A stretch of DNA of 40,383 nt from Perkinsus chesapeaki ATCC PRA-425 (GCA_013115145.1 JAAPAO010000313.1:1-40383); one strand, 5' to 3'; counted from the stretch's first letter, positions 7,027 through 40,383 are shown. Numbers and translations: made by a program. Notes: generated by a model not told the origin, from the letters alone.

Positions 7027-7098
7027 GGGCTGAGCCGAGAATCGAACCCGGGACCTCGCGCACCCGAAGCGCGAATCATACCACTAGACCACACAGCC
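7027..7098 (-). tRNA. tRNA-Pro (anticodon CGG)
   Basis: Reverse complement GGCTGTGTGGTCTAGTGGTATGATTCGCGCTTCGGGTGCGCGAGGTCCCGGGTTCGATTCTCGGCTCAGCCC: 72 nt, full cloverleaf, eukaryotic tRNA-Pro pattern; one U6-U67 mismatch in the acceptor stem. Confidence 0.95.
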
Positions 7099-15530: not shown

Positions 15531-17693
15531 TCAGCACGTACACACAACATCAGAACCCCAACAAAGTGATGGGGACTTCCAATACATACAGTACGACCCT
15601 GCAACCAACTTGGAACACTGGAGGTCAGCTTGGTGGCAATCAGGAGCAGTAGTGGACCTCTGTGTGGTAACCTCGCCACTCGTTGGAGTGGGCGATTGAG
15701 TGGTGGAAGTTGACAACCCTCCGCTACATTGACAAGGCACGTTGCTTCCCCAACAGACGGGTGGATACTGATCGATTTTACAATAGGACCCAGGATAACC
15801 TTCCGCGCATATTGCATCAGCCATGGAACAGTCCATTCCAGTGGTCGGTGTCGTCGAAGTCGTGGAAGTAGTAGTGACAGGATAGGAACTTGTCGTTGCT
15901 GCAGTGGTTGTAGTGGTGGTAGCAGTTATGGTAGTAAAAGGCAAGGTAGCTGTTGTTGTGGATGGAGTAGTTGTTGTTGCGAACGGAGTGGTTGTTGTTG
16001 TTGTTGTGGATGGAGTAGTTGTTATGGTTGTTGCGAAGGGTGTGGTTGTTGTTGTTGCCTTCCGGCCACAAATCTCATCGTCAATCTGAATAGTCATATT
16101 CTTAATAGAGGGGAAGGCGAACATATCAATGCTATTATACTTGCACTTCACCTGCTGCAGCCTAGCATAGGTCTCGCTGTTTGGGAAGTACTGGTCGATC
16201 CACTCAAAGTCGGTGCTGAGGTCAGAGTCGATGTAGTTCTGATAAGCTTGATGAAGCGATACAGGCAGCACCGTACTATAGGCTTTGTGGAGCCACTGAA
16301 TTCTCTCCTGTGGAGGAGCTTGGTCAGGATACCAGCTTGCTATCATTTGCAGATGCCACCCGTCGACTCTGTGATCGAAAGCAGTGCACTTGCGGCCAGA
16401 ATGAGCGTCACAATCCTTGGGCTCTTCTGCCATGGCGTGACCATAGAAATCAAACTGAAGCACGCAGTCGGTATTCCACTTGCAGATGGGATCGAGGCTG
16501 AGCTCTGCCATGGTTTCGAGAGTAGCGATGTCGATGTCTTTGTCGAAATAGAGGGACTTTGCCTTATAAGGACTAGCCAGACTGTGAGTGTTCCAATCCC
16601 AGCACTCATTCATCGACTTCTTAAGTTCACTCTCACTGCATTTTTGGACACCATCGGGAGGATAGAAATCCATCCAGGACGCCGCAGTGCAGTCTGCCCA
16701 GAACCACATGGCCTCACCGAAGCTTTGCTCCAGGATAGAGTACTTTTCAACACCAACAGAATCAGCTAATGCCTGCACTTTCCCCTGGCAGGATGAGCAG
16801 TCGCCAGACGCATCGCAAATGCACTGCGCGCTAAACTGAATTGCGCCACCACCAAGGAACTTGCCGATTCCGAACATCTCCGGGCCGGCCGCCGAAGAGT
16901 GCATGAAGGTCTGGAAGGCTTTGATGCGTTGTGCTTGCAGGGAAGGATTCACGTCGGAGCTCTTCCCAGATATCACGACCACATTAGTGACTGGGAAGGC
17001 CTTATATCGCAGTGTGACGATGACGCCGTAATTACCACCCATACCACCCCTCAAGGCGAAGAACAGATCAGAGTGCTCGTTGAAGCCTGTGGCGGTCACT
17101 AGCTCGAATTTGCCGGTGGATTCGTTATACACCACAACATCAGCGGAGACCAACCTATCAGCGGTAATGCCGTACTTGGCAGAAGAGAGACCATGTCCCC
17201 CACCAGAGAGCAGACCGGCGATACCAACTGTTGGACCGGAGCCGGCTGCTAGACCGAGTGGAGGGTCGTGGCGGGCCAACCGAGAATATGCTTCAAGCAA
17301 GCGTAGGCCGGCACCCATTGAAGCGATGTAGTCACCGTTGACTTCGGATACACTGAAACCAGTTAGCCTCTCCAAATCGATAACAATACCATTATTAACA
17401 GTGGACTGGCCGATATACGAGCTTCCCTGATTGCTGCGAATCGCCACTGGCGCAACCTCCTCGTGACAAATTTGAAGCGCGGCGATGATGTCGTCGGCAG
17501 AAGTGACATTGACCATGGCAGCTGGCGAGTAACCGTGAGCTTGATCGAAGCGTTCGTTGTAGGGCGGTGGAATATCGGTGGTTTGCACTTGGCCAGGGAG
17601 GGCTGAGATTAAACGGGAGACAGCTGACTGGACATCACCGGTGGCCACCGCGCAAAGGGAGAAAATGGCAAGTATATAGGAAAACCACACCAT
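15531..17693 (-). CDS. Secreted berberine-bridge-enzyme-like FAD-linked oxidase (FAD_binding_4 + BBE) with Thr-rich stalk and two Cys-rich C-terminal modules; intronless
   Basis: 737-aa ORF; likely start MVWFSYILAIFSLCAVATG (signal peptide, ATG 17693); PTVGIAGLLSGGGHG, DLFFALRGGMGGNYGVIV, BBE tail YQNYID...YARLQQVKCKYN; poly-Thr tract; two GSYC...CWGS modules. Confidence 0.88.
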   Translation of the reverse strand: MVWFSYILAIFSLCAVATGDVQSAVSRLISALPGQVQTTDIPPPYNERFDQAHGYSPAAMVNVTSADDIIAALQICHEEVAPVAIRSNQGSSYIGQSTVNNGIVIDLERLTGFSVSEVNGDYIASMGAGLRLLEAYSRLARHDPPLGLAAGSGPTVGIAGLLSGGGHGLSSAKYGITADRLVSADVVVYNESTGKFELVTATGFNEHSDLFFALRGGMGGNYGVIVTLRYKAFPVTNVVVISGKSSDVNPSLQAQRIKAFQTFMHSSAAGPEMFGIGKFLGGGAIQFSAQCICDASGDCSSCQGKVQALADSVGVEKYSILEQSFGEAMWFWADCTAASWMDFYPPDGVQKCSESELKKSMNECWDWNTHSLASPYKAKSLYFDKDIDIATLETMAELSLDPICKWNTDCVLQFDFYGHAMAEEPKDCDAHSGRKCTAFDHRVDGWHLQMIASWYPDQAPPQERIQWLHKAYSTVLPVSLHQAYQNYIDSDLSTDFEWIDQYFPNSETYARLQQVKCKYNSIDMFAFPSIKNMTIQIDDEICGRKATTTTTPFATTITTTPSTTTTTTTPFATTTTPSTTTATLPFTTITATTTTTTAATTSSYPVTTTSTTSTTPTTGMDCSMADAICAEGYPGSYCKIDQYPPVCWGSNVPCQCSGGLSTSTTQSPTPTSGEVTTQRSTTAPDCHQADLQCSKLVAGSYCMYWKSPSLCWGSDVVCTC

Positions 17694-18799
17694 TACGGAC
17701 GTTAAGACATAGTGCGATGTTCGCGGTAACCAAGTCATTCCCAAGGGGACAGGCTTTGTGTGCTGTGGCGCTAGGAGATAGTTTCATCGTTATTAGTCGA
17801 GTTCAGTGCCCTGAAACATGCCAAATGAGCCTGTGAGTTAACTACCGGGCTGAACCCCAAACTTCAGCGGTTCCGGCTCCAGCCAATAATAAGGGATGCT
17901 CTCGCGGTGCTCACAAAGCTACCGAGGGCCTGCGAGGAGGCCATTTCATCCCAACTTGATCTGGTCAAGTTGACCACTAGTCAATGACTATTGGGATAAT
18001 ACCGCAGTGTGACGGCGGCTGACGGTGATAGTCAACAACTATTCCGGACACCCGCACTTTATGGGGCTGCTGTTCGGACTAGATCGGTAATACCGATTCG
18101 GAGGGGAGGGGGCTCCGACGGAGCCGCTCCGCTTGGAACGGCTTTTCGCTGGATAATGCGGTTGCCCAACTTAATCGACAACATTGACGGCGTAAACAGT
18201 TGTACACTGTACGATTAAGCTTCAAGCAACTTGAACCTTGATCGTACATTGATCACCCTCGAATCAAGTGTGAATGCCGGATACCAGCGGCTGAAAGTAG
18301 TACATCATTACAGTGCGTAACTCCGAAGGAAACGAAATAGGTGTAGGAGACATAGGGCAATATGCCCCTATGGGGGGTATGTTTTTAGTAACATTCTTTA
18401 GATGGAAATTCCTCGTGATGCTTCGGCTCACCAAGCGAATTCGGCGATTAGAATAGTTTGATAAACATACAATAAAATATCAAGAAATATCATCGCCTTG
18501 ACAATGCTCGAGTTGGCCGAGTTGGCTGGCTGTCGATGACTCGAGAATCAGGACGAAGTCTGTTTAGCAGGAAGATGTTGTTCCCTCGGTACCATCTATG
18601 GCCTATTTTGATAAAAGTATTTCCAAGGTGATCGAGTTGCCTTTCTTACAGGGAAGTCGGTCATATGTCTTCTTGGACATTTTATTAGATATTCCCAAAG
18701 GACATCGCGTAAAGTATTTCCTCTCGAGGTTTGTTCCTTATGATACAGTTTACTGTATAAAACAACACGCAACAGTTGGAAAATATTAAAAATTATAGT

Positions 18800-19872: not shown

Positions 19873-20007
19873 CTGAAACACGAGCAATACTCTCTAGCAC
19901 TAAAATTCCGNNNNNNNNNNNNNNNNNNNNNNNNNNNNNNNNNNNNNNNNNNNNNNNNNNNNNNNNNNNNNNNNNNNNNNNNNNNNNNNNNNNNNNNNNN
20001 NNNNNNN

Positions 20008-28729: not shown

Positions 28730-30300
28730 CAGCCCTCCCCAATGAAATAGAATATTTCGTTTTTTAACGATTTCTCGTCTGCTACTGAGTGTACGACCTT
28801 AAAATTCTGTAGCATAGTACTAGAAGACACAGCAAGGAAGAACATGTAAATCGATCAACCGTTTCATGCCTGGGTGCAAAGATACCGGCGCGCGAAATTT
28901 TCCGCGCGCGCAGAACTGCCTCGGTAAAATAGAATACTTTCGAAAGACACGCGATACCAGCCACCGCCACGCAGTTCCTTCGTTGTTTCTCAAACATGGG
29001 CCGCTCCACACACGTTTCTACTGAAGATCGCGAAAAGATCAAGCCCATCCTGATGGCCGCAAGAAGTTCACACAGAAAGATTTGGCCGCTGCCTTCCAGC
29101 TCAGCCAAAGTGCGGTCAGTAAGATCATCAAGGAAGGCCCGAAGGACACGCCGGAGAGGAGGGGAGCGAAGCCGAAGCTTTCCCCGGCCCATAAAAGGCG
29201 GATCGTGCGTTCCTTGGTACAGGAGCCGGGGCTTAGCTGTGCGGGACTGGTCAGGGAACTGGGTTTGGATGTAGGTAGGGAGACGGTAAGGCGGTTTCTA
29301 GACTCCGAAGCAGCAGAGTGGGCCTCCGTGAAAGGGGCACCGGTCTTGAAGGCCACTCATAAGGCTGCTAGAGTGGCGTGGGCGAATAAGTATCTTGTTG
29401 GCGGGACAGATTTCAAGACCTTCGTTTTCACTGATGAGAAGAAATTTAATCTGGATGGTCCAGATGGCGTGTATCACTACTGGAAGCTCCCGAAGTCCGC
29501 TGACATCGTCAGGTCGAAACGTAGCTTCGGTGGTGGGTCGGTAATGGTCTGGGGTGCCATATGTGGTAGCAAGAAGCTTTCCTTGGCGGTGGTCGACACC
29601 CGCCTCAACTCTGCCAAGTACCAAGAGCTTCTGGCCGCCCACCTTCTACCCGTTCTGGAGCCAGGGATGACCTTCCAACAAGACAACGCGTCCTGCCACG
29701 CTTCCCGAAGCACTAAAAAGTGGTTGGAGGACCACGATGTACCGACTTGTACCTGGCCCTCGCTTAGTCCAGATTTGAACCCCATCGAAAATGTGTGGGG
29801 AAAGCTCGCTATGATGGTCTATCGGCCTGGTGGCCCCTCATATTCATCGGTGGAGCAGCTACGTGCTGCTATATTCCAGGCTTGGGAAGAAATGGAAGAA
29901 GAATTCGTGGGTAAGTGCACAGATTCCATGCGGAAAAGACTGTGTGCGGTTCTCGAGAGGGGAGGGAAGGTAATTGACTATTAAGTTTCTGATTTGTGAG
30001 TAGCATGTCAAAGCGTGTCTTTCATAGTACCTAGTATCACATTATGGAGTATTGAGTTGTCCAGCAGGGCGAGTAGCATTGGCTAGTATAAAGTATTCTA
30101 TTTTACCGAGGCAGTTCTGCGCGCGCGGAAAATTTCGCGCGCCGGTATCTTTGCACCCAGGCATGAAACGGTTGATCGATTTACATATTCTTCCTTGCTG
30201 TGTCTTCTAGTACTATGCTACAGAATTTTAAGGTCGTACACTCAGTAGCAGACGAGAAATCGTTAAAAAACGAAATATTCTATTTCATTGGGGAGGGCTG
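28730..30300 (+). mobile_element. Tc1-family DNA transposon, 1,571 bp, 211-bp TIRs, TA target-site duplication
   Basis: TIRs 28730-28940 and 30090-30300 differ at one position (28843/30187); begin CAG; TA at 28728-29 and 30301-02; internal transposase. Confidence 0.95.
28996..29984 (+). pseudogene. Tc1 DD34E transposase with one apparent frameshift near codon 16
   Basis: MGRSTHVSTEDREKIK (ATG 28996) is in a different frame from AHPDGRKKFTQKDLAAAFQLSQSAVSKII...FTDEKKF...FQQDNASCH...SPDLNPIENVW; 34 residues between the second D and E. Confidence 0.88.
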
Positions 30301-31429: not shown

Positions 31430-32599
31430 GAAGGCAACGAAACATTGAGTAACATTACGCAACGCACAGGATAAGCTAGAGACGGACTATTAACCACTTC
31501 ATGTGGTACGTCATGCTGGAGCCGACATTTTTGTAGGATACTGCTGGTATGTTCCCTACCAACAGAAACTACCACAAGAAACTATTACGCTTTACTCTGC
31601 AACGTTCAGGAGATTAGCATGCATTAGCCATCCAAAAGTGGTTCATTCGAGACTACCGGCACTGTCGGTGGGTCAGCCCTGTCGAGCGGAGCAGATACGG
31701 GCCCTCCGGCAGGAACTTATGTCGTAAAGGAACGAACACCTCGGGACTCCTAGGGCCTTCCCGAGGCGCTGAGAATGGGCGGCCATGTGAGTCGATTGAG
31801 GAAATCAAACTCCTGCGTACATTACAAGGCACTGGTCCGAATGTACACACCTTCGACTGTCCCTCCATGTGGTCTTTACTTTCCTGATTGGGCGGAGAGC
31901 TTATCTGAGGAGAGTAAGGAGTTCACCAAGGTAACACTAATGCTGCTGCAAAGCTCACTAGACATGACCGATTACAACTTAAGTCTGCTCGAGGGACTCC
32001 ATATAGTGCATAATTGGTAAAACACCGAGGCTGGTTACCAAGTCACAAGGTGAAGCCTGTCTTCGTCTTCTACTACGTGCAGATGGTACTGCATGGTGCG
32101 CGCATCATCAAAATCGATCAAATTGGCGTGCGCTTTTTACAGCGCATGATGCCCTACGGTCGCATCGTTGCGTTTGATAAGGCCTTATCGTCACGTCGGC
32201 CCTAATAATGATTCTAATAAACCCTCTGAGCTCCGCGTGTGGTGGTTCTGGCCCTACTGGTGCACTGTGCTTTCAGCTATTACCTCACTTTATCAACTAA
32301 ATGCACTTTCCGACTGCCATCATCACCATTTATGGGGTCACCACCATCAACACCATTGAAGTAAGCTCGTCGCTGAATTATTATCCTCCTCTCTTAATTA
32401 ACCCCGCCTCTCAAATCTGCATTTGTCTATGCATGCTATCGTCTATTTTGTTGGCATCTGAAGGGTATTAAGCCATTTTATCTCCCCGTTGGTCGTCCCC
32501 CTTGCCCTACTTGGAGTGATTCTCTAAAGCGTCAAGTAGAGCCACACTAGCTCTACTCGACCCATCTCTTCGCTCGGTTGTGCCCTTTTACGTATTCCC

Positions 32600-34814
32600 T
32601 CCGCCTATGGTCGAAACACTCCTCTGTTTTCAGGCCCGATGCGATCGAAGTTCCTCTGGCCAGTTCCGCGGCTCATCGGCAACATTGAAGCCCGACTCCG
32701 AGGGCGTATCTTTCATCCAAGAGGGGGCTCAGGTTAGTTACACACTATGAAGATTTTCAAGAGGTTCTCCTCAGGCCAGCAGCGAAAGCCGAATGATGGC
32801 GTGGCCGGTCGCCTCGGTAGGCCAAAAACTGCCCTGATAGATTTTTTGTGGATGCTGACTATTTCAGGTTGCCGAGATTGCCTTTGGCCAAGGCCACTAC
32901 TTCAACGTACAATGCATGGAGAGCCATTGTGGAGCTCAATTGAACGACTGCCTGGATGAGACCGATGGCAGCATCGAACCAACTTTCAACAAGTAGGATT
33001 CGCTCTGACCATGCTTGCTCAGCGCCGACGAGAAAATCGAAGGAGAGGTGAAATTCGTTATTTCAGGGACAAAAAGACTCTGCACCAGTCTCAATGTGGA
33101 ATAGTGCTGACTTGCCTTTGGCATGAGGAGCAGGCTGAGGAGAAGACGGAACAGACCGAGAACAAGCAGAACCCGGTAGGTTCTCACCAGGGATCGAACC
33201 CGGGTCGCCTGATGGTTAGTTTCAGGGCAAGCTCTCCGCCCTGGCGACCAAAGCGCTGGAGTTCGCCAGAAGCGCTAGAAGGATGCAAGGCGCCGACCAC
33301 TGCACGGACGGCATCAACCGCCTTGATGAGTCCCCTATGGAGGGAAGTTTGATGAAGTGTGCGGCGGACTTTGGCTGTCAGCGCATCAAGACGTAGGAAA
33401 CTGTCGAGGACTGTTCAGCTGTTTCATTGGCTTCTCTTTAGGGACGACCTGGCAGAGCAAGCAGCTAGTGGTGCCGTGCCGGGGGAGAAGAAAGTGCTGG
33501 AAGAAGTTGCTGAGGTGAGCTAGGCGTTGGGCGGCGGCACTTGGCAGAAAATACGCGGTGCTGCATGCGGAGTGGATGAGGGAATTTGATGTGCATCATC
33601 ATCGGTTTATCAGCCCCCTAGGGAGTAAATGAGGTGATTTACAAATGCTGCGTATTCATGCATATTTCTTTATTACTTGTCTAAGTTAGTCGTGTATGTA
33701 CGCTTTTAGTGGACACTTGACACGATCATTTTTGTGACACTTGAAATGAGTTTTACTCACCTTTGTTGTTTTATTATTATCTTCTGTATTAGGGCAAATC
33801 GATGATGGAAATAGAGTCGTCGGAGCCTCAACTACAACCAGCTTTCGTCAGCTTTGATGCCATTGATCCCGAGTGCTGGCAGAGCAATTGTGATCTCGAG
33901 CTTGGCAACTGCGACCAAGGTGAGCAATGTCTCGTTGCTTCCAGCGGTGCGTTTAATGAAGCCTTACGGAATGCCTGTGGACGTCGTTATATTGTAAACC
34001 TGTAGATGTGGATAGATTTTCAAAGATGTAGCTTACAATAGTAAGCTCATCTGTTTACTATGATCGGTGTAGTGTGGTCGGATCCAAGGTGGTCAGATGC
34101 TCAGGTGGCCACTAGGGGGCGCCGCGTAAACATTAAAGATATAAACATTTATCACTCATCGGGATAACCTGCTTTTTCATATAACTGCACATCTTTACAG
34201 TTTATATGAGATTGACGACTGTATTATCACTTGTGAAGTGAATATAGTGTCATACCTATTGGGGGAATAGTACTCGATACAAGTGAATTGGAGAAACCAA
34301 TGTGGGCTGAAGATTATTTACATTCATACCTTCAGTTGGTTTTGTACAGCTCAAACGGCTGACTAGTGCAACCGATATATCCTCATCGAGTTCGACTCTG
34401 CTGCCTTTTCCCTGTCAGATATCGAGTGTCATTCAATGGTCGAGTGTCTGGAGATTCGGCAGTCCCGAGGGGAGGACGAAAACGAGTGCACGAAACATCT
34501 GTATAAGCTGGACAAGTACAAAAGCGATGTGCTGACTTGTGGAAAAAAGTCGAAGTGTTTTAAGGTGAGCACGCATGGCTCTGGAGTAGAAAGTCATAGA
34601 GGAAATATCAAACACAAATGGAATGCACTTCTTGTACTTTAACAGTTATTATTAGCAAATACTGACTTTAACCTATTTCAAGTTGATCCATACCTTTCAC
34701 GCCTATCATACGTCTCAAATGGAGGAGTTATCGGTTGTTTTCAAGAAAAACTTTCCTACCGCCGTTCCTGGTGATATCTCACTCGCTTCTTCGGGAACAA
34801 TTTTCGATGCCTGA
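32600..34814 (+). CDS. Multi-exon protein with two Cys-rich modules and SFIQ/SMME motifs (ends approximate)
   Basis: Exons join as ...EGVSFIQEGAQ|ASSESRMMAWPVAS|VAEIAFGQGHYFNVQCMESHCGAQLNDCLDE...SQCGIVLTCLW...|GKSMMEIE...ECWQSNCDLELGNCDQ|DIECHSMVECLE...KSKCFK|...GTIFDA*. Confidence 0.55.
33176..33225 (-). other. 50-nt intron containing an antisense tRNA 3'-half-like fragment
   Basis: Reverse complement GGCGACCCGGGTTCGATCCCTGGTGAGAA forms a complete T-stem-loop; intron removal joins KQNP|GKLS in frame. Confidence 0.7.
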
Positions 34815-34949
34815 GGGATGCGTTGTCGTGTGACTAGATAAGTCGACGCCGGTAACGTGTCGTGTATGAAGCTCTCTATTTGCAGCACTTGTTAGCCCTG
34901 GACGCAGCCGGATGCATAATCGTTGCTTTAATCGGGGGTCTCCTTGTAG

Positions 34950-37900
34950 GCGAGCTCATCTCCGGTATCGTTCCTGGAGCTGTCGGAGACCGCAGCCAGT
35001 CCGAGTTCGTTTTTTCAATTGTCGGCCAAATCTTCGAGCGAGAGGAGCCTTGATGAGACGCGAAAGAAGACTGATGAGATGGTCGAGAAGGTGAGTTCCG
35101 AAGGTCTGTAGGAGGAGGAGGCCAATGCGGGTAGACAGTAGTATAATATATTATCACGGTATTACTAGTGCTATCAACTTTCTGAATATCTATAGTCACT
35201 TCACTGATGAAATAGTTTTCAAGTAAGTTATTGTATGTATAGCTGACATTAAGGAGCACTTAATGCATGTTGGCCTCGGTGATGCAAAGTCGCCATGCTC
35301 CGTTATCTTCCCTAAATCCTGCTAAATCTGTTTGTGATTCACTGGGACCGTGTTGAGGCGATGCGTGCACACTATTGATTGGAGTAATTAGTCGACGAAC
35401 GGTGGATCGGTTATTTTACCGAGCGCGAAAGTGGTATTATTTTTCCCAGTAAGGAGTTGTCGTTTTTGTCAGCTGAACGCCAAGATGGCCGAACTCAACA
35501 AGGAATTCGCCGACACTGAAACGGAAGAGAAAAACGACTTTAATAAGCTGGAGAAAGCCAAGGAGGATTCTGACAAGTAGCATAATTTCGTGGCGCGTGA
35601 AAGTTTATGTACTGTCCAGGAAAATGGAGGAATCTGAGCACAACTTTGAGATGCAGGAAGAGAAAATTATGGATGATCCTAGTGGGGCGCGCGGTCATCT
35701 GATGGCCTCGGAATTTCGCCATTTTCAGTGCCCTCGGCGTCCGGTCCTTCTGGCACGTCCAGCTTCATGCAGTCCTCGGACGGCCCGGCTTTCTTGGAAC
35801 CGCTGAGGAAGATCGCAAAAGAGGCGAGATCGTTCTCCATGAGCATGAGGCAGGAGGCGCAGCAAATGGAAGAGTTTGCTAGGAAAAAGTGTAAGAATCG
35901 AATGGCTACTTTCGCGGGGGCAGGAATGTCTTCATTTTCTTGATGGGAATTTTCGCTAAATTTTTTGTGCATTTCTGTATCCGGAGGGACAATAATTAAT
36001 GGTGGACGAATTCGGACAGTGCGGCAGATTTTTATTACGGCACTTTGATTTCATGACGACTCGTTTTCATATCGGACGGCTCCGTTAACTCCGCAAGTAG
36101 GAATCCGACTTGCGAAGTTAATAGATCTGTCCGATAATAATGATAATAATGGTGTAATAATAGATCCTACTGCAGTATACGGTGCAGTCGATTCTGAATA
36201 AGAATTGTTGGCCGCGGTCTCGAGTTGGGACTTTACCGCTCATTCGGAGGGTTTTGGGAGTCCTTTGACTTTCAGCCAAGAATTTGAAGCACCCGCACCG
36301 ATTGGATTCGGCCTTCGCTCCACTCTCGCTGCTGCAAGTTGGGGACACGGCCGACTATTCGACGGCGATGAAGGCGGAGAGCGACGATGATGCTAAAGTC
36401 CAGGAGAGCTTGGCGAAGGCGCAGAAGGCAGTAGGAAGGCAGTGGTGGTGCAGCAGGAGTTCATACCGCATTTTCATTTCAGTTGGCAAGTTTGAAGGAC
36501 GACGTTCAAGCCCAATCTGCGGAGTTGAGCAAACAACAAAAGGAGGATGCCGCTGAGGAGGCGGCGGCGGAGAAAAATCAGCCAGCGCCGCCGATCGGTG
36601 CTCCGGGAAGTTTCGTCCAGACCGGATCTGGCAAGCATGTGGATGTTTCAGGATGGGTTAACAGGTAAGAAATTCGTGGCGCGCGGGAATAGGGATTGGG
36701 TACTGCAGATTCCGCGAACGGTTGAACAATATTCACGGTGGTTCGGCGGAGCGAAGCGATGATTCTTTGACGGATTTCGGCTCCTCCTCTTCGGATCTCG
36801 ATGACGGTATGTCCCTCCTCGAAACTAAGGCGAAGAGCAAAAAGTCCTTTGATGATTTTGAGGAAGATGGCGGTAACGTCGGCTTTGGCGAGGGCAGCGG
36901 TCTGGCCTTGACCGAGGGAGACATTTTCAAGGATCCCGAGGTCAAGGATGAGACTCCGAGGTTCGTGGATCCTGCGGATGCACCAATCGATACGGACAAG
37001 AGCATTATTGCTGAGCCGGGTGATGACGTGCCGACTCCGGAAGTCGAGCCTGAGTCGTCTTTCTTGGAAGCGAAGGCGAAGGGACCGATTGGCTTGGTGG
37101 GTTGACCTGTTTTGTATCATGCAGGCTTTGAGGTAAGATATGTCTTTTGCTTTTCTCAGGACAGCGATGAGATGAATTCTCGTGAGCGTGAAGTTGCCCG
37201 ACTTGATGATGCCTTCACCGCACAGTTTGCCAAACTTAAAGCGAAGAATCTCGAAATGCAAGCGGAGGCCAAAGCCGAGGTGGGCAGCGAATCGATCGTT
37301 TACAGATTTACAATTGGGCCCCGTGGTATTGGACGGTGACTATTCACCTAGCGGCGTCTGGTCAATCGTCGCGCGCCACGAAATTAAGTACGTTCTTGCT
37401 CAGCTCGATAAGGCTCTGGATGACCAAGCGAAGTTTGAAGCGGAAAATCCGAACATTGGCAACGATATTACATCGTTAATGCAGCTGAATGACCGCGCGC
37501 CATTTAATTTGGAGAAGCACGCGGATGAGATCAGAGAGCTGGAGAGCAAGTGGGAGAGGGAAGCGAAGAAAATCGAGGTGAGTTTGGCAAGTACTTTTCG
37601 ATAGAAGTATTATTTCAGGCGACTCCGGACACTTCCGAGGTAGATTCTGAGTGGCAGAATAAGATTGAGAATTTGAAGGAACAGAAGCAAGAGAAGGACG
37701 CGAAGTTGCAGAAAATTGAGCAGAGAATGTCAGCTAGTGTTGCCGCGTTGAAGCAGGTAAGGATAGCATCTGTACAGCTGCTGTGAGTGAGCTGTTATTT
37801 GCATCAGGACTCGCATCAAATCGGTGATATTGTGAAGCAGCGCAGCCTGCACCGCGACGACGACGGTGCATCCTTTTTTGAGATGAGCGGCAAGCATAGC

Positions 37901-38321
37901 AGCAAAGTGGCCCAGAGCCTTCATCAGTAAGAAAAATTGAGGAAAAGTTGGTATGAGATGCACTGCTGCGGACAGGTTGAGCAATATGATAGACGAGAAC
38001 TTGGCCAAGACGAGGGCAGAGGAGTTGACACTTCGAGATGAGGAGAAAGGCTTGGATCAGAACGCTATGGGGGGAGTCGAGTTGGCCAGCCCAGTCGGCG
38101 ATGGAAGCATCTCGTCATTCATGGAAGAGAAGAAGGCGAGGCAGGATGCTATTTTCGGCGATAGGGTAAGGATGCATTATCGATCACTTGATCGATTTCG
38201 TGTTCAGAATCTTTCCCCTACTCTGAGATCTGCTCTTGCCAAGGCGGACGCTACTCTGGCGGCTCTCCAGGAGCAGATCAGACACTCCAAGTTTACTCCG
38301 TTGAAGCCGGCAGATATCTGA
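34950..38321 (+). CDS. Multi-exon acidic coiled-coil protein with ten S-hydrophobic-hydrophobic-[E/Q] motifs; 5' end unresolved
   Basis: In-frame exon chain from ASSSPVSFLELSE... to ...KFTPLKPADI*; helical E/K/A-rich blocks separated by motif-containing linkers. Confidence 0.7.
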
Positions 38322-38527
38322 TAGATGAGCAACACCATGGAATCATGCTGCTGCTGCTATCAGTTGGATGTGGTCATATGTGGAGATCTCGAACGGTGTG
38401 GCGTTGGTTAATTATGAGGCGCGCGGTAAAATAGATGATATGAGCTTTATTCCAGGGATACTTTCAATCAGTCGAAGGCATTTTCAGTTCGGTTGGAACT
38501 TTCAATTTTTTTATCTTTTCTTCTGCG

Positions 38528-38597
38528 GGGAAAATTTCCCTTTTTCCAGAAATTTTCCTTTTTTTCAGAGATTTTCCTTTTTTTCGGAAATTTTCCT
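38528..38597. repeat. Low-complexity GAAATTTTCCTTTTTTT repeat (~20-nt units)
   Basis: About four degenerate units; the reverse complement resembles the 30-bp unit at 20008. Confidence 0.65.
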
Positions 38598-38747
38598 CCT
38601 CTCTCTGTCCCACACGGGAGGCAGTCTACGGCTGGTGAATATAGGTGCGCTCTTGAGGAAGTTGTATTTCTGGGGGTTAAAGGAGTAGTCGGGTGCAGGT
38701 GGTGTCGACGGTTATGTTATGATCAGCTATTACCACTTACAAATAAT

Positions 38748-40383
38748 ATGCACTTCGTTCTGATCACTTCATCCCTCACAGCCGTCTTCACCGCTGGAGC
38801 CAGACATCGCAGTAAAGCTGAGATTGACTGGGATAAGAGCCAGAAGGACACTGATGAGCTGGTTGCAAAGGTGAGTGTTGTCTTAATTAGAGGAATAAAT
38901 ACTGTTTTGGACCGTGGGGGATGTGGTCCGTAGATTCTGAAGGGGATCTGCAGAATCGTAGTTGATTAGTCTAGTCAGCAAACAAACCTTCTAGAGTTGC
39001 TCGATAGAGAGAAGTCGATGGTGCATATTTGGTGGCGCAGTGACTTTGTCTTTGTAGGTCAACGCGGAAATGAAGGTACTTGGGAACGACCTGGACAGGA
39101 CTGCCAAGCAAGACAGGAAGGATTTGGCCCTTTTGGAACAGAGCAGGCGTTCTGAGGATATGTAACAAACGCAGGTTCGATCCCCGGCGCCGATTTTTTT
39201 TTCATTTTAGGACCCTCGAAGAGACCGAGGAAAGTCTGAGGAGGCTGGCAAAGCAGGAGAGCAAAGACGACGCCAGTGAGCCGAAGATTATCCGTTCCTT
39301 CAGCTGTCATTGCGGCGTTCTTGTCAGTTCCGTTTTCGAGCTTTTTTCAATCGCATAACAATAACGATACTGCCATTCCCGTCAGTGGCCCGCCAGCCTC
39401 CTCCACGACAGGAGGCTCACTTCTCGAGTCTGGCATTAATAAGGCGAAGGAATGGGCATCATCTATGGTGGACAGCGTGAAGGCGGCAGGTCGGTCGAGC
39501 TGCTGCTGCTGCTCATGAACAGTTGACTCGGTTGAGTTGCGATTCCCTAGTTTCACCGCTACGTCTATTGCGCCCCTCGGAAATATAGCGTAGCTGAGAG
39601 TAGGGTGTAGGAGAGTGGTCCACCACATAGTGGTAGACTGGCAATAGCGTGTTGCTGTGGGCCCTCGTTGTTGAGGTGATCCGGACAAGTGCGATGTTGT
39701 CGAAAATGGAGAAATATGTGTATAGTTCTGTGTAACCTTTTTCACTTCGAGAATCTTCGTGAGGATAATTTTATCGTTCTCAGGTGCCAGTTTTTTACAA
39801 ATACACAATGACGACAGCATCGAAGCCAACAGCGAAAAGGCGCAGCAGAGCATCAACGTCGCTCAGGAAGCGGTAGAATTACCAAAGCCCGTCGGCCTTG
39901 GTTATGCCGGTTTTCAGCTTAGCAAGTTGAACGTGGATTTGGCAAACCAACAGAGAGTTCTAGAGTCTGAGCAGAAGGAATTCGCGAAGAGCTCCGAAAC
40001 CAGGCCGACGCTCAGTTTCGAGGGTCACGAGGCGGCAGGCGTCGCTCCGCTGGATTTCGGCGACTCTGTCGGAGCGTCGTTTTTACAGACTGGCGAGGCC
40101 AAGGGGCCGATCACTCCCGATATGCTGCAGGAGTGGTATGCTAAGTAAGCAGCATAATAATTTCGTGGCGCAGTGACAATACATCGAGTAGGTTTGAAGA
40201 TTCGTTGAGCAAAGTCAGAGCTGACGCTGGTCTTCCGGATATTCCGAGGAGTTCATTTCTCCAGAAGGGGATCAACTTCGCTAGCATGGCTGTAGAATGA
40301 CCGGCGGCGGCGGGGATTCGGAGAGGCAATTGTTGGTTAGGCGAACGAGAAGGTGAAGAAGGACCAGCGAGATGTGGAGCATT
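38748..40383 (+). CDS. Secreted coiled-coil paralog of the 34950-38321 gene; runs off window end; start uncertain
   Basis: MHFVLITSSLTAVFTAGA (signal-like); KDTDELVAK|VNAEM aligns with KKTDEMVEK|LNAKM; AQEA|LSKL aligns with AQKA|LASL; SLLE, SFLQ, SFLQ motifs; one GC-AG intron 39147-39210. Confidence 0.65.
39147..39210 (+). other. 64-nt GC-AG intron containing a tRNA T-arm-like fragment followed by T9
   Basis: ...GCAGGTTCGATCCCCGGCGCCGATTTTTTTTTCATTTTAG; removal joins EQSR|TLEE in frame. Confidence 0.65.

What the first reader, a model, noticed from the sequence alone, without database searches (positions are those of the whole stretch)
32700..40383. Gene cluster with 15 S-hydrophobic-hydrophobic-[E/Q] motifs: candidate polyproteins for an alveolate secretory maturase
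Seen: SFIQ 32709, SMME 33799; SFLE 34968, SFFQ 35007, SFMQ 35761, SLLQ 36326, SFVQ 36609, SLLE 36812, SFLE 37058, SLMQ 37473, SFFE 37871, SFME 38115; SLLE 39417, SFLQ 39789, SFLQ 40077. They sit in G/S/P-rich linkers between coiled-coil or Cys-rich blocks, ten in one protein. Established: S-phi-X-E/Q-type sites are processing sites of apicomplexan rhoptry and microneme proteins (Toxoplasma ASP3, Plasmodium plasmepsin IX/X), and ciliate trichocyst matrix proteins are processed coiled-coil precursors. Inference: these are extrusome or rhoptry cargo precursors chopped into many helical peptides, encoded as a cluster.
Basis: partly seen in the sequence, partly recalled or inferred. Interest (0 to 1): 0.75.

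Follow-up and report, generated by a model that had tools for sequence, protein, structure and literature searches.

The report
Secreted parasite proteins with repeated cut-site motif
Two neighbouring genes of the clam parasite Perkinsus chesapeaki encode secreted, mostly helical proteins whose flexible linkers each carry a short motif that matches the cutting site of the malaria and Toxoplasma secretory maturases. This suggests, but does not show, that they are chopped into many small helical pieces.

Summary
All 15 motifs are at the stated coordinates on the + strand, and three more lie in frame.

The gene count does not hold. There are two tandem genes, not three:
- Gene 1 (32301-38321, 22 exons) is the public hypothetical protein KAF4663568.1 of Perkinsus chesapeaki. 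It has a signal peptide, a Cys-rich region and a helical module, and carries 13 motifs where shuffling predicts 0.74.
- Gene 2 (38748 to the contig end) has its own signal peptide and a paralogous helical module with 5 motifs.

The motif is [G/P]-[S/A]-S-[F/L]-[L/V/M/I]-[E/Q]. In AlphaFold models it sits in every low-confidence linker between the long helices.

It is kept at aligned positions in several sets of relatives:
- the P. olseni ortholog;
- a second paralogous locus present in three Perkinsus species;
- the two modules, which are 25% identical;
- about 20 intronless relatives from metagenomes.

The tetrapeptide matches published plasmepsin X sites (SFIQ, SLVQ) and the Toxoplasma S-phi-X-E site.

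Several things remain open. Cleavage itself, the organelle and the protease are unknown. Of the 126 pepsin-family matches in the genome, 7 were tested and none is closest to plasmepsin X.

Verdict: an uncharacterised family and a plausible multi-site proprotein.

The scan had noted an intron motif in this same stretch (s1-232779).

The parts
32301..38321 (+). Gene 1, the public hypothetical protein KAF4663568.1 (FOL47_005687), 998 aa, 22 exons: 32301-32360, 32634-32732, 32775-32816, 32868-32992, 33067-33175, 33226-33392, 33442-33514, 33793-33919, 34419-34564, 34950-35090, 35473-35576, 35620-35681, 35729-35890, 36276-36430, 36483-36664, 36709-37096, 37160-37279, 37404-37577, 37619-37756, 37808-37926, 37976-38165, 38208-38321 (stop).
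   Evidence: The spliced translation equals P0001 residue for residue, and all introns are GT..AG. P0001 was found with one exon given by reference.
32301..32360 (+). Exon 1 of gene 1: signal-peptide-like N-terminus MHFPTAIITIYGVTTINTIE, followed by A-R-C.
   Evidence: by inspection; no signal-peptide predictor was available. The ortholog P0003 starts MSTAITALALLALGSEA.
32868..34564 (+). Cys-rich N-terminal region of gene 1 (residues about 75-315). Its 17 Cys residues are all invariant across the 24 family members.
   Evidence: Invariant Cys columns in alignment A4. No Pfam family at the curated cut-off.
34950..38321 (+). Helical module 1 of gene 1 (residues 316-998): ten long helices separated by G/S/P-rich linkers.
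   Evidence: AlphaFold2 models.
32709..32720 (+). Motif SFIQ (residue 46), between the signal peptide and the Cys-rich region. SLVE in P. olseni.
33799..33810 (+). Motif SMME (residue 228), in a linker inside the Cys-rich region. SMVE in P. olseni; absent from the paralogs.
34433..34444 (+). SMVE (residue 273). It lies inside a confident Cys-rich helix (CHSMVECLE) and is probably structural, not a linker site.
34968..34979 (+). Motif SFLE (residue 323), in the linker after the Cys-rich region.
35007..35018 (+). Motif SFFQ (residue 336). It is kept in 7 of 7 aligned relatives and directly precedes module 1.
   Evidence: (column 365).
35761..35772 (+). Motif SFMQ (residue 430), kept in 6 of 7 relatives. 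It is followed by the most conserved block of the family, (D/A)F(L/F)xPLR.
36326..36337 (+). Motif SLLQ (residue 490), kept in 6 of 7 relatives.
36609..36620 (+). Motif SFVQ (residue 567), kept in all 5 Perkinsus members.
36812..36823 (+). Motif SLLE (residue 620), in the long acidic linker 594-710.
37058..37069 (+). Motif SFLE (residue 702), kept in all 5 Perkinsus members.
37473..37484 (+). Motif SLMQ (residue 778), kept in 4 of 5 members.
37871..37882 (+). Motif SFFE (residue 880), kept in 7 of 7 relatives. S880 and F881 are invariant in all 24 sequences.
38115..38126 (+). Motif SFME (residue 945), near the C-terminus of gene 1.
38322..38747 (+). Intergenic spacer between gene 1 and gene 2. 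It holds a 19-nt tandem repeat at 38530-38597.
38748..40383 (+). Gene 2, cut by the contig end. It has a signal-peptide-like start (MHFVLITSSLTAVFTAGA) and helical module 2. My exon model: 38748-38870, 39058-39161, 39211-39275, 39328-39489, 39784-40144, 40192-40291 and onward. The remainder lies on contigs C731 and C1031.
   Evidence: The splice model reads through in frame. It is collinear with residues 900-1163 of the P. olseni protein P0003. A signal peptide directly before module 2 is also seen at the paralogous locus C2818.
39339..39350 (+). Motif SFFQ in gene 2.
39417..39428 (+). Motif SLLE in gene 2.
39789..39800 (+). Motif SFLQ in gene 2; it aligns with SLLQ/SLLE of module 1.
40077..40088 (+). 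Motif SFLQ (context GASFLQTG) in gene 2. It is kept in the P. olseni protein and in the metagenome relatives.
40253..40264 (+). Motif SFLQ in gene 2. SFLE in P. olseni.

Best explanation
The locus holds a tandem pair of paralogous genes for secreted proproteins.
- Gene 1: signal peptide, Cys-rich region, helical module 1.
- Gene 2: signal peptide, helical module 2.

Each flexible linker between the long helices carries one or two copies of a conserved linear motif, [G/P]-[S/A]-S-[F/L]-[L/V/M/I]-[E/Q].

The most likely reading is that these are endoproteolytic processing sites used in the secretory pathway. The enzyme would most probably be a pepsin-family (A1) protease with the same subsite preference as apicomplexan ASP3 and plasmepsin IX/X. 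Gene 1 would then be cut into about a dozen fragments and gene 2 into perhaps eight to ten. Most would be single helical peptides of 50-100 residues, apart from a 13-residue spacer and the Cys-rich region (182, 45 and 50 residues).

What is shown: the genes, the signal-peptide-like starts, the motif's enrichment, its place in linkers, and its conservation.

What is inferred: cleavage, the class of protease, and any storage in an apical or extrusive organelle.
For: (1) Enrichment. P0001 has 13 motifs against 0.74 expected. This is about 26 times the density in 21 other secreted Perkinsus proteins.

(2) Position. All 10 motifs of residues 315-998 lie in non-helical, low-pLDDT linkers. Those linkers cover about 40% of that stretch, and every major linker has at least one motif.

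(3) Conservation.
- Every motif except the last is kept in the P. olseni ortholog, with only E/Q and F/L/I/V/M swaps.
- Sites align between paralogs at about 30% identity.
- Sites align between module 1 and module 2 at 25% identity, E = 3e-12.
- Nine sites are present in 18-19 of 19 metagenome relatives.

(4) Extended logo from 77 instances: G/P at -2 (53%), S/A at -1 (57%), F 25-fold enriched at +1, T/L then G/S/A after E/Q.

(5) Secretory entry. Six independent signal-peptide-like N-termini were seen in the family.

(6) Match to known sites. Plasmepsin X cuts Rh2a/b at 'SFIQ' and 'SLVQ', and plasmepsin X and IX share the consensus (PMC7146544). Toxoplasma ROPs and RONs use S-phi-X-E, for example ROP1 SFVE, and depend on ASP3 (PMC5595437). 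The first site here reads SFIQEG, as in the Rh2N assay peptide HSFIQEGKEE.

(7) Swap argument. In gene 2, and in its counterpart on C2818, module 2 starts right after a signal-peptidase site. In the one-ORF metagenome relatives it follows a motif. A free N-terminus at that place is therefore made either way.

(8) The enzyme class is abundant: 126 PF00026 matches in the genome. An aspartyl cathepsin is needed for proprotein processing in ciliate granules (PMC4142616).
Against: - There are no protein-level data. Cleavage is inferred from sequence alone.
- No ASP3 or plasmepsin IX/X ortholog was identified. Of the 7 A1 proteases tested, 5 are closest to pepsin, cathepsin D, candidapepsin or renin, and 2 matched no solved structure at E <= 1e-6. 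The other roughly 119 were not tested.
- Dogga et al. found no clear ASP3 consensus by TAILS, so a motif match is weak evidence for a particular enzyme.
- No RNA evidence for the gene models was available. The P. olseni models fuse the two genes.
- No other motif cluster was found in the few other loci examined, so a general Perkinsus 'maturase code' is not shown.
Confidence: 0.45

Rival explanations
1. The motifs are cleavage sites, but for an unrelated protease. Candidates are a subtilisin, as was first proposed for Toxoplasma S-phi-X-E sites, or a protease that takes Gln or Glu at P1 and cuts after E/Q.
For: E and Q are interchangeable at the fourth position, and small residues follow (T, S, G, A). 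This is also what a Gln/Glu-specific P1 pocket would select. Mature Toxoplasma ROP1 and ROP13 start after the E (SFVE|APVR), and SUB2 was the earlier candidate. No plasmepsin X-like enzyme was found among the 7 proteases tested.
Against: For Plasmodium the same tetrapeptide is cut by purified plasmepsin X. F then L/V/M/I is the classic hydrophobic P1-P1' pair of pepsin-family enzymes. The A1 family is hugely expanded here.
Confidence: 0.2
2. The motif is not cut. It is a conserved short linear motif in the linkers with another role: docking to a sorting receptor, strand-like contacts that zip the helices into a higher-order assembly, or a modification site.
For: The conservation and linker position fit any linear motif. 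The motif at residue 430 is part of a longer conserved block (SSF[ML][EQ]..DFLxPLR), which could be a binding element.
Against: - It is hard to see why 10-20 copies per locus of one docking motif would be needed, one in each linker.
- S-x-x-E/Q with two bulky hydrophobic residues does not fit the secretory kinase site S-x-E (my own knowledge).
- The equivalence of a motif and a signal-peptidase site in front of module 2 points to the making of an N-terminus.
Confidence: 0.25
3. The motif is structural (an S-x-x-E helix N-capping box), or a by-product of composition or repeat ancestry, with no function of its own.
For: S-x-x-E is the textbook capping box (my own knowledge). The modules are ancient duplicates, so some shared motifs are inherited.
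Against: - In the models the motifs lie 6-14 residues before the next helix, not at its cap; residue 945 is the only exception.
- They are followed by G/S/T, not by helix formers.
- Shuffles that keep the composition never exceed 5 motifs, against 13 seen.
- At 25-30% identity the flanks have diverged, while the motif class is kept at aligned sites.
Confidence: 0.05

Closest known systems
Substrates of apicomplexan ASP3 / plasmepsin IX and X (ROPs, RONs, MICs, Rh, EBA, SUB1, AMA1)
   Same: Both are secretory proteins with a tetrapeptide S-[F/L/M]-[hydrophobic]-[E/Q] in exposed segments. The exact strings SFIQ and SLVQ-like occur in both.
   Different: - Known substrates have one to a few sites, usually to remove a prodomain. 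Here there are 10-13 sites per protein, one per linker.
- The organism is a perkinsid, outside Apicomplexa.
- There is no sequence homology to any known substrate.
- Neither the enzyme nor the organelle has been identified.
Ciliate dense-core granule proproteins (Paramecium trichocyst matrix proteins, Tetrahymena Grl) processed with the aspartyl cathepsin CTH3
   Same: Both are alveolate, signal-peptide-bearing, helix-rich precursors. Conserved motifs at their processing sites have been reported, and an A1 protease is required (PMC4142616).
   Different: No detectable sequence or profile similarity. The ciliate precursors give about two products each. No trichocyst-like organelle is linked to this protein.
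Classical polyprotein or propeptide precursors, such as neuropeptide and antimicrobial peptide precursors (my own knowledge)
   Same: One secreted precursor with many similar units, separated by a repeated short processing signal.
   Different: Those use dibasic sites and furin- or Kex2-type enzymes. Here the units are long helices of different sequence, and the site is hydrophobic and acidic.
Cys-rich N-terminal domain of violaxanthin de-epoxidase (Pfam PF07137, positions 3-74)
   Same: The second Cys-rich unit gives weak matches in 2 of 24 members (E = 0.005-0.008).
   Different: The matches are below the curated cut-off. They are absent in the other 22 members, including the window's own protein. 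No VDE match exists in the genome. This is a lead only.

Membership tests
ASP3 / plasmepsin IX-X substrate (S-phi-X-E/Q proprotein) | Enters the secretory pathway (signal peptide). | tested here: met
   Hydrophobic N-termini followed by small residues, seen in gene 1, gene 2, both C2818 genes, the P. olseni orthologs and 18 metagenome relatives. This is by inspection; no predictor was available.
ASP3 / plasmepsin IX-X substrate (S-phi-X-E/Q proprotein) | Carries the tetrapeptide S-[hydrophobic]-x-[E/Q] in an accessible segment. | tested here: met
   13 + 5 sites. 15 of the 18 lie in predicted disordered linkers or, for gene 2, in the homologous positions.
ASP3 / plasmepsin IX-X substrate (S-phi-X-E/Q proprotein) | Is cleaved at the motif in a protease-dependent way. 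| not testable with these tools
   This needs N-terminomics, immunoblots, or inhibitor or knock-down experiments.
ASP3 / plasmepsin IX-X substrate (S-phi-X-E/Q proprotein) | The genome encodes an ortholog of the clade of ASP3 / plasmepsin IX/X. | tested here: inconclusive
   There are 126 PF00026 matches. Of 7 ORFs compared with solved structures, 5 are closest to pepsin, cathepsin D, candidapepsin or renin, and 2 gave no match. No apicomplexan reference sequence could be brought in for a tree.
ASP3 / plasmepsin IX-X substrate (S-phi-X-E/Q proprotein) | Resides in rhoptries, micronemes or exonemes. | not testable with these tools
   There are no localisation data, and no paper names these accessions.
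Ciliate trichocyst / mucocyst matrix proproteins (TMP, Grl) | Sequence homology to TMP or Grl proteins. | tested here: not met
   Searches with the protein and with two profiles against 5.8 billion proteins returned only Perkinsus proteins and unnamed metagenome relatives. One exon searched against 1.84 billion representatives returned only itself. No Pfam family matched.
Ciliate trichocyst / mucocyst matrix proproteins (TMP, Grl) | Signal peptide plus helix-rich precursor with conserved processing motifs. | tested here: met
   This is a likeness in how the protein may work, not homology.
Violaxanthin de-epoxidase Cys-rich domain | Match to PF07137 above the curated cut-off. | tested here: not met
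   The best score is 16.7 bits against a cut-off of 25.7, in 2 of 24 members. There is no match in the genome.

The most novel reading that the evidence does not exclude
The S-[F/L]-[hydrophobic]-[E/Q] maturation code of apicomplexan invasion organelles would predate Apicomplexa. In perkinsids it would be used at an extreme: a dedicated two-gene precursor, kept in two paralogous loci, is diced at about 20 sites into single-helix peptides. These would form the stored content of a secretory organelle or wall layer, and one or more of the 126 expanded pepsin-family proteases would act as the maturase.
Probability: 0.3. Interest if true: 0.75.

Novelty: new variant of a known kind. Interest (0 to 1): 0.58.

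Why it matters
If the sites are really cut, three things would follow.
- The substrate code of the druggable ASP3 / plasmepsin IX-X maturases would be older than the apicomplexans.
- Perkinsus, a culturable and transfectable relative and a serious shellfish pathogen, would offer a natural multi-site reporter substrate for this kind of processing.
- A family of about 30 uncharacterised proteins would gain a function.

The family includes a diverse group of unidentified compact-genome eukaryotes that are common in metagenomes.

If the sites are not cut, the family is still a clean example of a linker motif kept under strong selection, and it needs another explanation.

Tried and rejected
- Own-genome searches with two single exons found no paralog. 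The paralogous locus C2818 appeared only later, through a profile search.
The public model solved this: it is the continuation of the 'first gene'.
- A DNA pattern for S-F-L-[E/Q]-T-G gave 7 genome hits against 1 for the control. The six loci outside the window have no motif clusters.
- The helix N-cap reading is rejected on the models.
- The PEXEL/TEXEL (RxLxE) reading is rejected: no Arg precedes the motifs.
- The secretory kinase S-x-E reading is rejected on spacing.
- Pfam, the PDB sequence profile, Foldseek on the model and the ESM Atlas gave nothing usable.
- The VDE lead is unsupported.
- Seven PDB look-ups failed to find a plasmepsin X-like protease.
- The taxonomy of the metagenome relatives could not be settled. 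Their RPB2 is only about 63-83% identical, exon by exon, to that of Perkinsus, and a CCT piece is 69% identical.
- No paper mentions the accessions, or links Perkinsus with ASP3 or plasmepsin IX/X.
- The joined model of gene 2 has no reference, so it was not sent to any search tool. It was used only inside scripts to count motifs.
Full report
**Organism and locus**

The window is a whole contig (C2328, 40,383 bp) of a 41.7-Mb assembly. A protein encoded here is identical to KAF4663568.1, 'hypothetical protein FOL47_005687 [Perkinsus chesapeaki]'. This agrees with earlier notes of the scan that name the organism. The DNA is eukaryotic, with many short GT..AG introns.

**Observation**

A six-frame scan finds all 15 listed tetrapeptides at the listed coordinates on the + strand. 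I built exon models by hand from splice signals and reading frame. One long exon, given by reference, then retrieved the public 998-aa protein P0001.

A 22-exon model (32301-38321) reproduces P0001 exactly. It carries 12 of the listed motifs plus SMVE at 34433.

A second gene starts at 38748 with its own signal-peptide-like exon and runs off the contig. It carries the other three listed motifs plus SFFQ 39339 and SFLQ 40253. Its remaining exons are on contigs C731 and C1031.

The joined model of gene 2 has no reference. I did not send it to any search tool and used it only inside scripts.

**Is it more than chance?**

- P0001 has 13 motifs against 0.74 expected from 20,000 shuffles. The largest shuffle count was 5; Poisson p is about 2e-12.
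- The P. olseni ortholog has 21 motifs against 1.1 expected.
- Twenty-one other secreted Perkinsus proteins (A1 protease ORFs, 8128 aa) have 4 strict motifs, roughly 26 times lower in density.
- Six other loci show only scattered six-frame hits.

**Anatomy**

Gene 1 encodes, in order:
- a signal-peptide-like start (MHFPTAIITIYGVTTINTIE);
- a short linker with SFIQ;
- a Cys-rich region of about 240 residues, whose 17 Cys residues are invariant in all 24 aligned relatives;
- about 680 residues of long helices.

With a 24-sequence alignment, AlphaFold2 gives helices of pLDDT 85-94 separated by non-helical linkers with pLDDT below 50. The linkers are at 318-346, 417-436, 477-498, 561-578, 594-710, 773-790, 876-889 and 928-948 (the same picture appeared with 4 sequences).

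All ten motifs of this part lie in these linkers, and every one of the eight linkers has at least one. The linkers cover about 40% of the stretch, so ten out of ten by chance is about 1e-4.

Pooling 77 instances from the family gives the logo [G/P]-[S/A]-S-[F>L]-[L>V,M,I]-[E>Q]-[T/L]-[G/S/A]. Cutting at every motif would give fragments of 50-100 residues, mostly one helix each and acidic.

**Relatives**

A search with P0001 found the P. olseni ortholog P0003 (64% identical) and two distant metagenome proteins. Profile searches added:
- a second P. chesapeaki paralog, P0007, on contig C2818;
- its P. olseni and P. marinus orthologs, P0006 and P0008;
- about 20 metagenome proteins of 880-914 aa.

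The metagenome proteins are intronless. They lie on compact eukaryotic contigs next to histone, RPB2, CCT, VPS9 and MutL genes. Their organism is unidentified: RPB2 is about 63-83% identical, exon by exon, to that of Perkinsus. No Pfam family, solved structure, fold match or Atlas look-alike was found. No paper names these proteins.

**Conservation of the motif**

- All sites but the last are kept in P. olseni, with only E/Q and F/L/I/V/M exchanges.
- Between paralogs about 30% identical, the sites at P0001 residues 336 and 880 are kept in 7 of 7. Those at 430 and 490 are kept in 6 of 7. Those at 567 and 702 are kept in all 5 Perkinsus proteins.
- Identity at motif columns is 0.38-0.46 against 0.21-0.26 elsewhere for the Perkinsus paralogs.
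- The two helical modules are ancient duplicates (25% identical over 470 residues, E = 3e-12), and their motif sites align.
- In 19 metagenome relatives, nine sites are present in 18-19 sequences, again with class-conserving swaps.

**Two genes or one?**

The P. olseni models fuse both modules. In P. chesapeaki, however, gene 1 ends at a stop. The paralog on C2818 ends at a stop whose C-terminal peptide is shared with the P. marinus model. About 160 nt downstream on C2818 there is a new ATG with a clear signal peptide (MRTLITFIVTTSTVPLALA) directly before module 2.

The same arrangement holds in the window (MHFVLITSSLTAVFTAGA, then module 2). I therefore read both loci as tandem gene pairs.

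In the metagenome relatives, both modules are in one ORF and module 2 is preceded by a motif. The same boundary is thus served either by a motif or by a signal-peptidase site. This is what one expects if the motif produces a free N-terminus.

**Comparison with what is known**

- Favuzza et al. report that plasmepsin X cuts Rh2a/b at 'SFIQ' and 'SLVQ'. They also report that each position of the tetrapeptide matters, and that plasmepsins IX and X share the consensus (PMC7146544).
- Mukherjee et al. list NFLD, SSIE and IALE as self-cleavage sites (PMC9352755).
- Dogga et al. give S-phi-X-E as the rhoptry consensus (ROP1 SFVE, ROP13 SFTE) and show dependence on ASP3. They note that no clear consensus emerged from TAILS (PMC5595437).
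- In Tetrahymena, the aspartyl cathepsin CTH3 is needed for processing of granule proproteins, and conserved motifs at ciliate processing sites have been described (PMC4142616).

The motif here fits the plasmepsin X-type tetrapeptide well. The first site even reads SFIQEG, as in the Rh2N assay peptide.

**What is missing**

There is no evidence of cleavage or of location. The genome has 126 matches to the pepsin family, many as intronless ORFs with almost no prodomain. Of the seven I compared with solved structures, five are closest to pepsin, cathepsin D, candidapepsin or renin, and two match nothing. None is closest to plasmepsin X. Orthology of a maturase is therefore open.

I found no paper linking Perkinsus with ASP3 or plasmepsin IX/X.

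**Rivals**

- A different protease class, for example one that cuts after E/Q, would fit the same data.
- A non-cleaved docking or assembly motif cannot be excluded. It explains the one-per-linker pattern and the signal-peptide swap less well.
- A helix-cap role is contradicted by the models: the motifs lie 6-14 residues before the next helix and are followed by G, S or T.

**Verdict**

This is an uncharacterised family found in Perkinsus and in unidentified eukaryotes from metagenomes. It consists of secreted helical proteins with a strongly conserved linker motif that matches a known class of apicomplexan processing sites. The many-site architecture outside Apicomplexa makes it a new variant of a known kind. 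Whether it is really cut, by what, and where it goes all need experiments.

Noticed in passing
window 35585-35596, 36671-36682, 37373-37384 (- strand), 40160-40171: A 12-nt motif (A)ATTCGTGGCGC occurs four times where 0.15 is expected. All four lie inside introns of gene 1 (three) and gene 2 (one). In two cases they sit in homologous introns of the two modules. This is the motif another reader noted (s1-232779).
   Followed up: partly
window 39173-39195 (intron 2 of gene 2) and 33185-33215 (intron 4 of gene 1, reverse strand): These short introns contain tRNA T-arm / 3'-end-like strings (GGTTCGATCCCCGGCGCC and its like on the other strand). This fits earlier notes on tRNA-derived introns in this genome. 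Rfam called only one full tRNA in the window, at 7027-7098.
   Followed up: no
G000 genome-wide; loci L001-L008 and L022-L033: There is a very large expansion of pepsin-family (PF00026) genes: 126 matches, often in tandem arrays. Many are intronless ORFs whose first DTG is only about 58 residues from the start, so they have hardly any prodomain.
   Followed up: partly
G000:C2818:1-6509 (- strand): This is a paralogous tandem pair: FOL47_006742 followed by a second gene with its own signal peptide. It has the same architecture and motif sites. The P. olseni public models (P0003, P0006) fuse the two genes of each pair, probably through annotation errors.
   Followed up: yes
L034 (ENA ERZ19569877 scaffold_5, 376 kb), L035, L012: The relatives of the family sit in very compact, intron-poor eukaryotic genomes of unknown identity. 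The genes are 80-200 bp apart, in a syntenic block of ABC1 kinase, this gene, CCT, cytochrome b5, RPB2 and DSS1. About 20 diverged versions occur in ENA, JGI and Logan metagenomes.
   Followed up: partly
P0007 residues 206-277, P0008 residues 201-271 (counterpart in window: about 33850-34564): There is a weak match of the second Cys-rich unit to the start of Pfam PF07137 (violaxanthin de-epoxidase), with E = 0.005-0.008, below the cut-off. It is seen in only 2 of 24 members, and there is no VDE match in the genome.
   Followed up: partly
window 29082-29984 (+): An intact-looking Tc1/mariner-type transposase ORF (DDE_3 plus HTH_Tnp_Tc3_2).
   Followed up: partly
window 15531-17744 (-): A secreted FAD-linked oxidase of the berberine-bridge type. 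It has a long Thr-rich, mucin-like tail and two Cys-rich C-terminal repeats.
   Followed up: partly
window 38530-38597: A 19-nt tandem repeat (3.6 copies) in the spacer between the two genes.
   Followed up: no
window about 19900-20000: A run of N (an assembly gap) inside the window, next to a repeated ENLGKKLRNS-coding unit.
   Followed up: no
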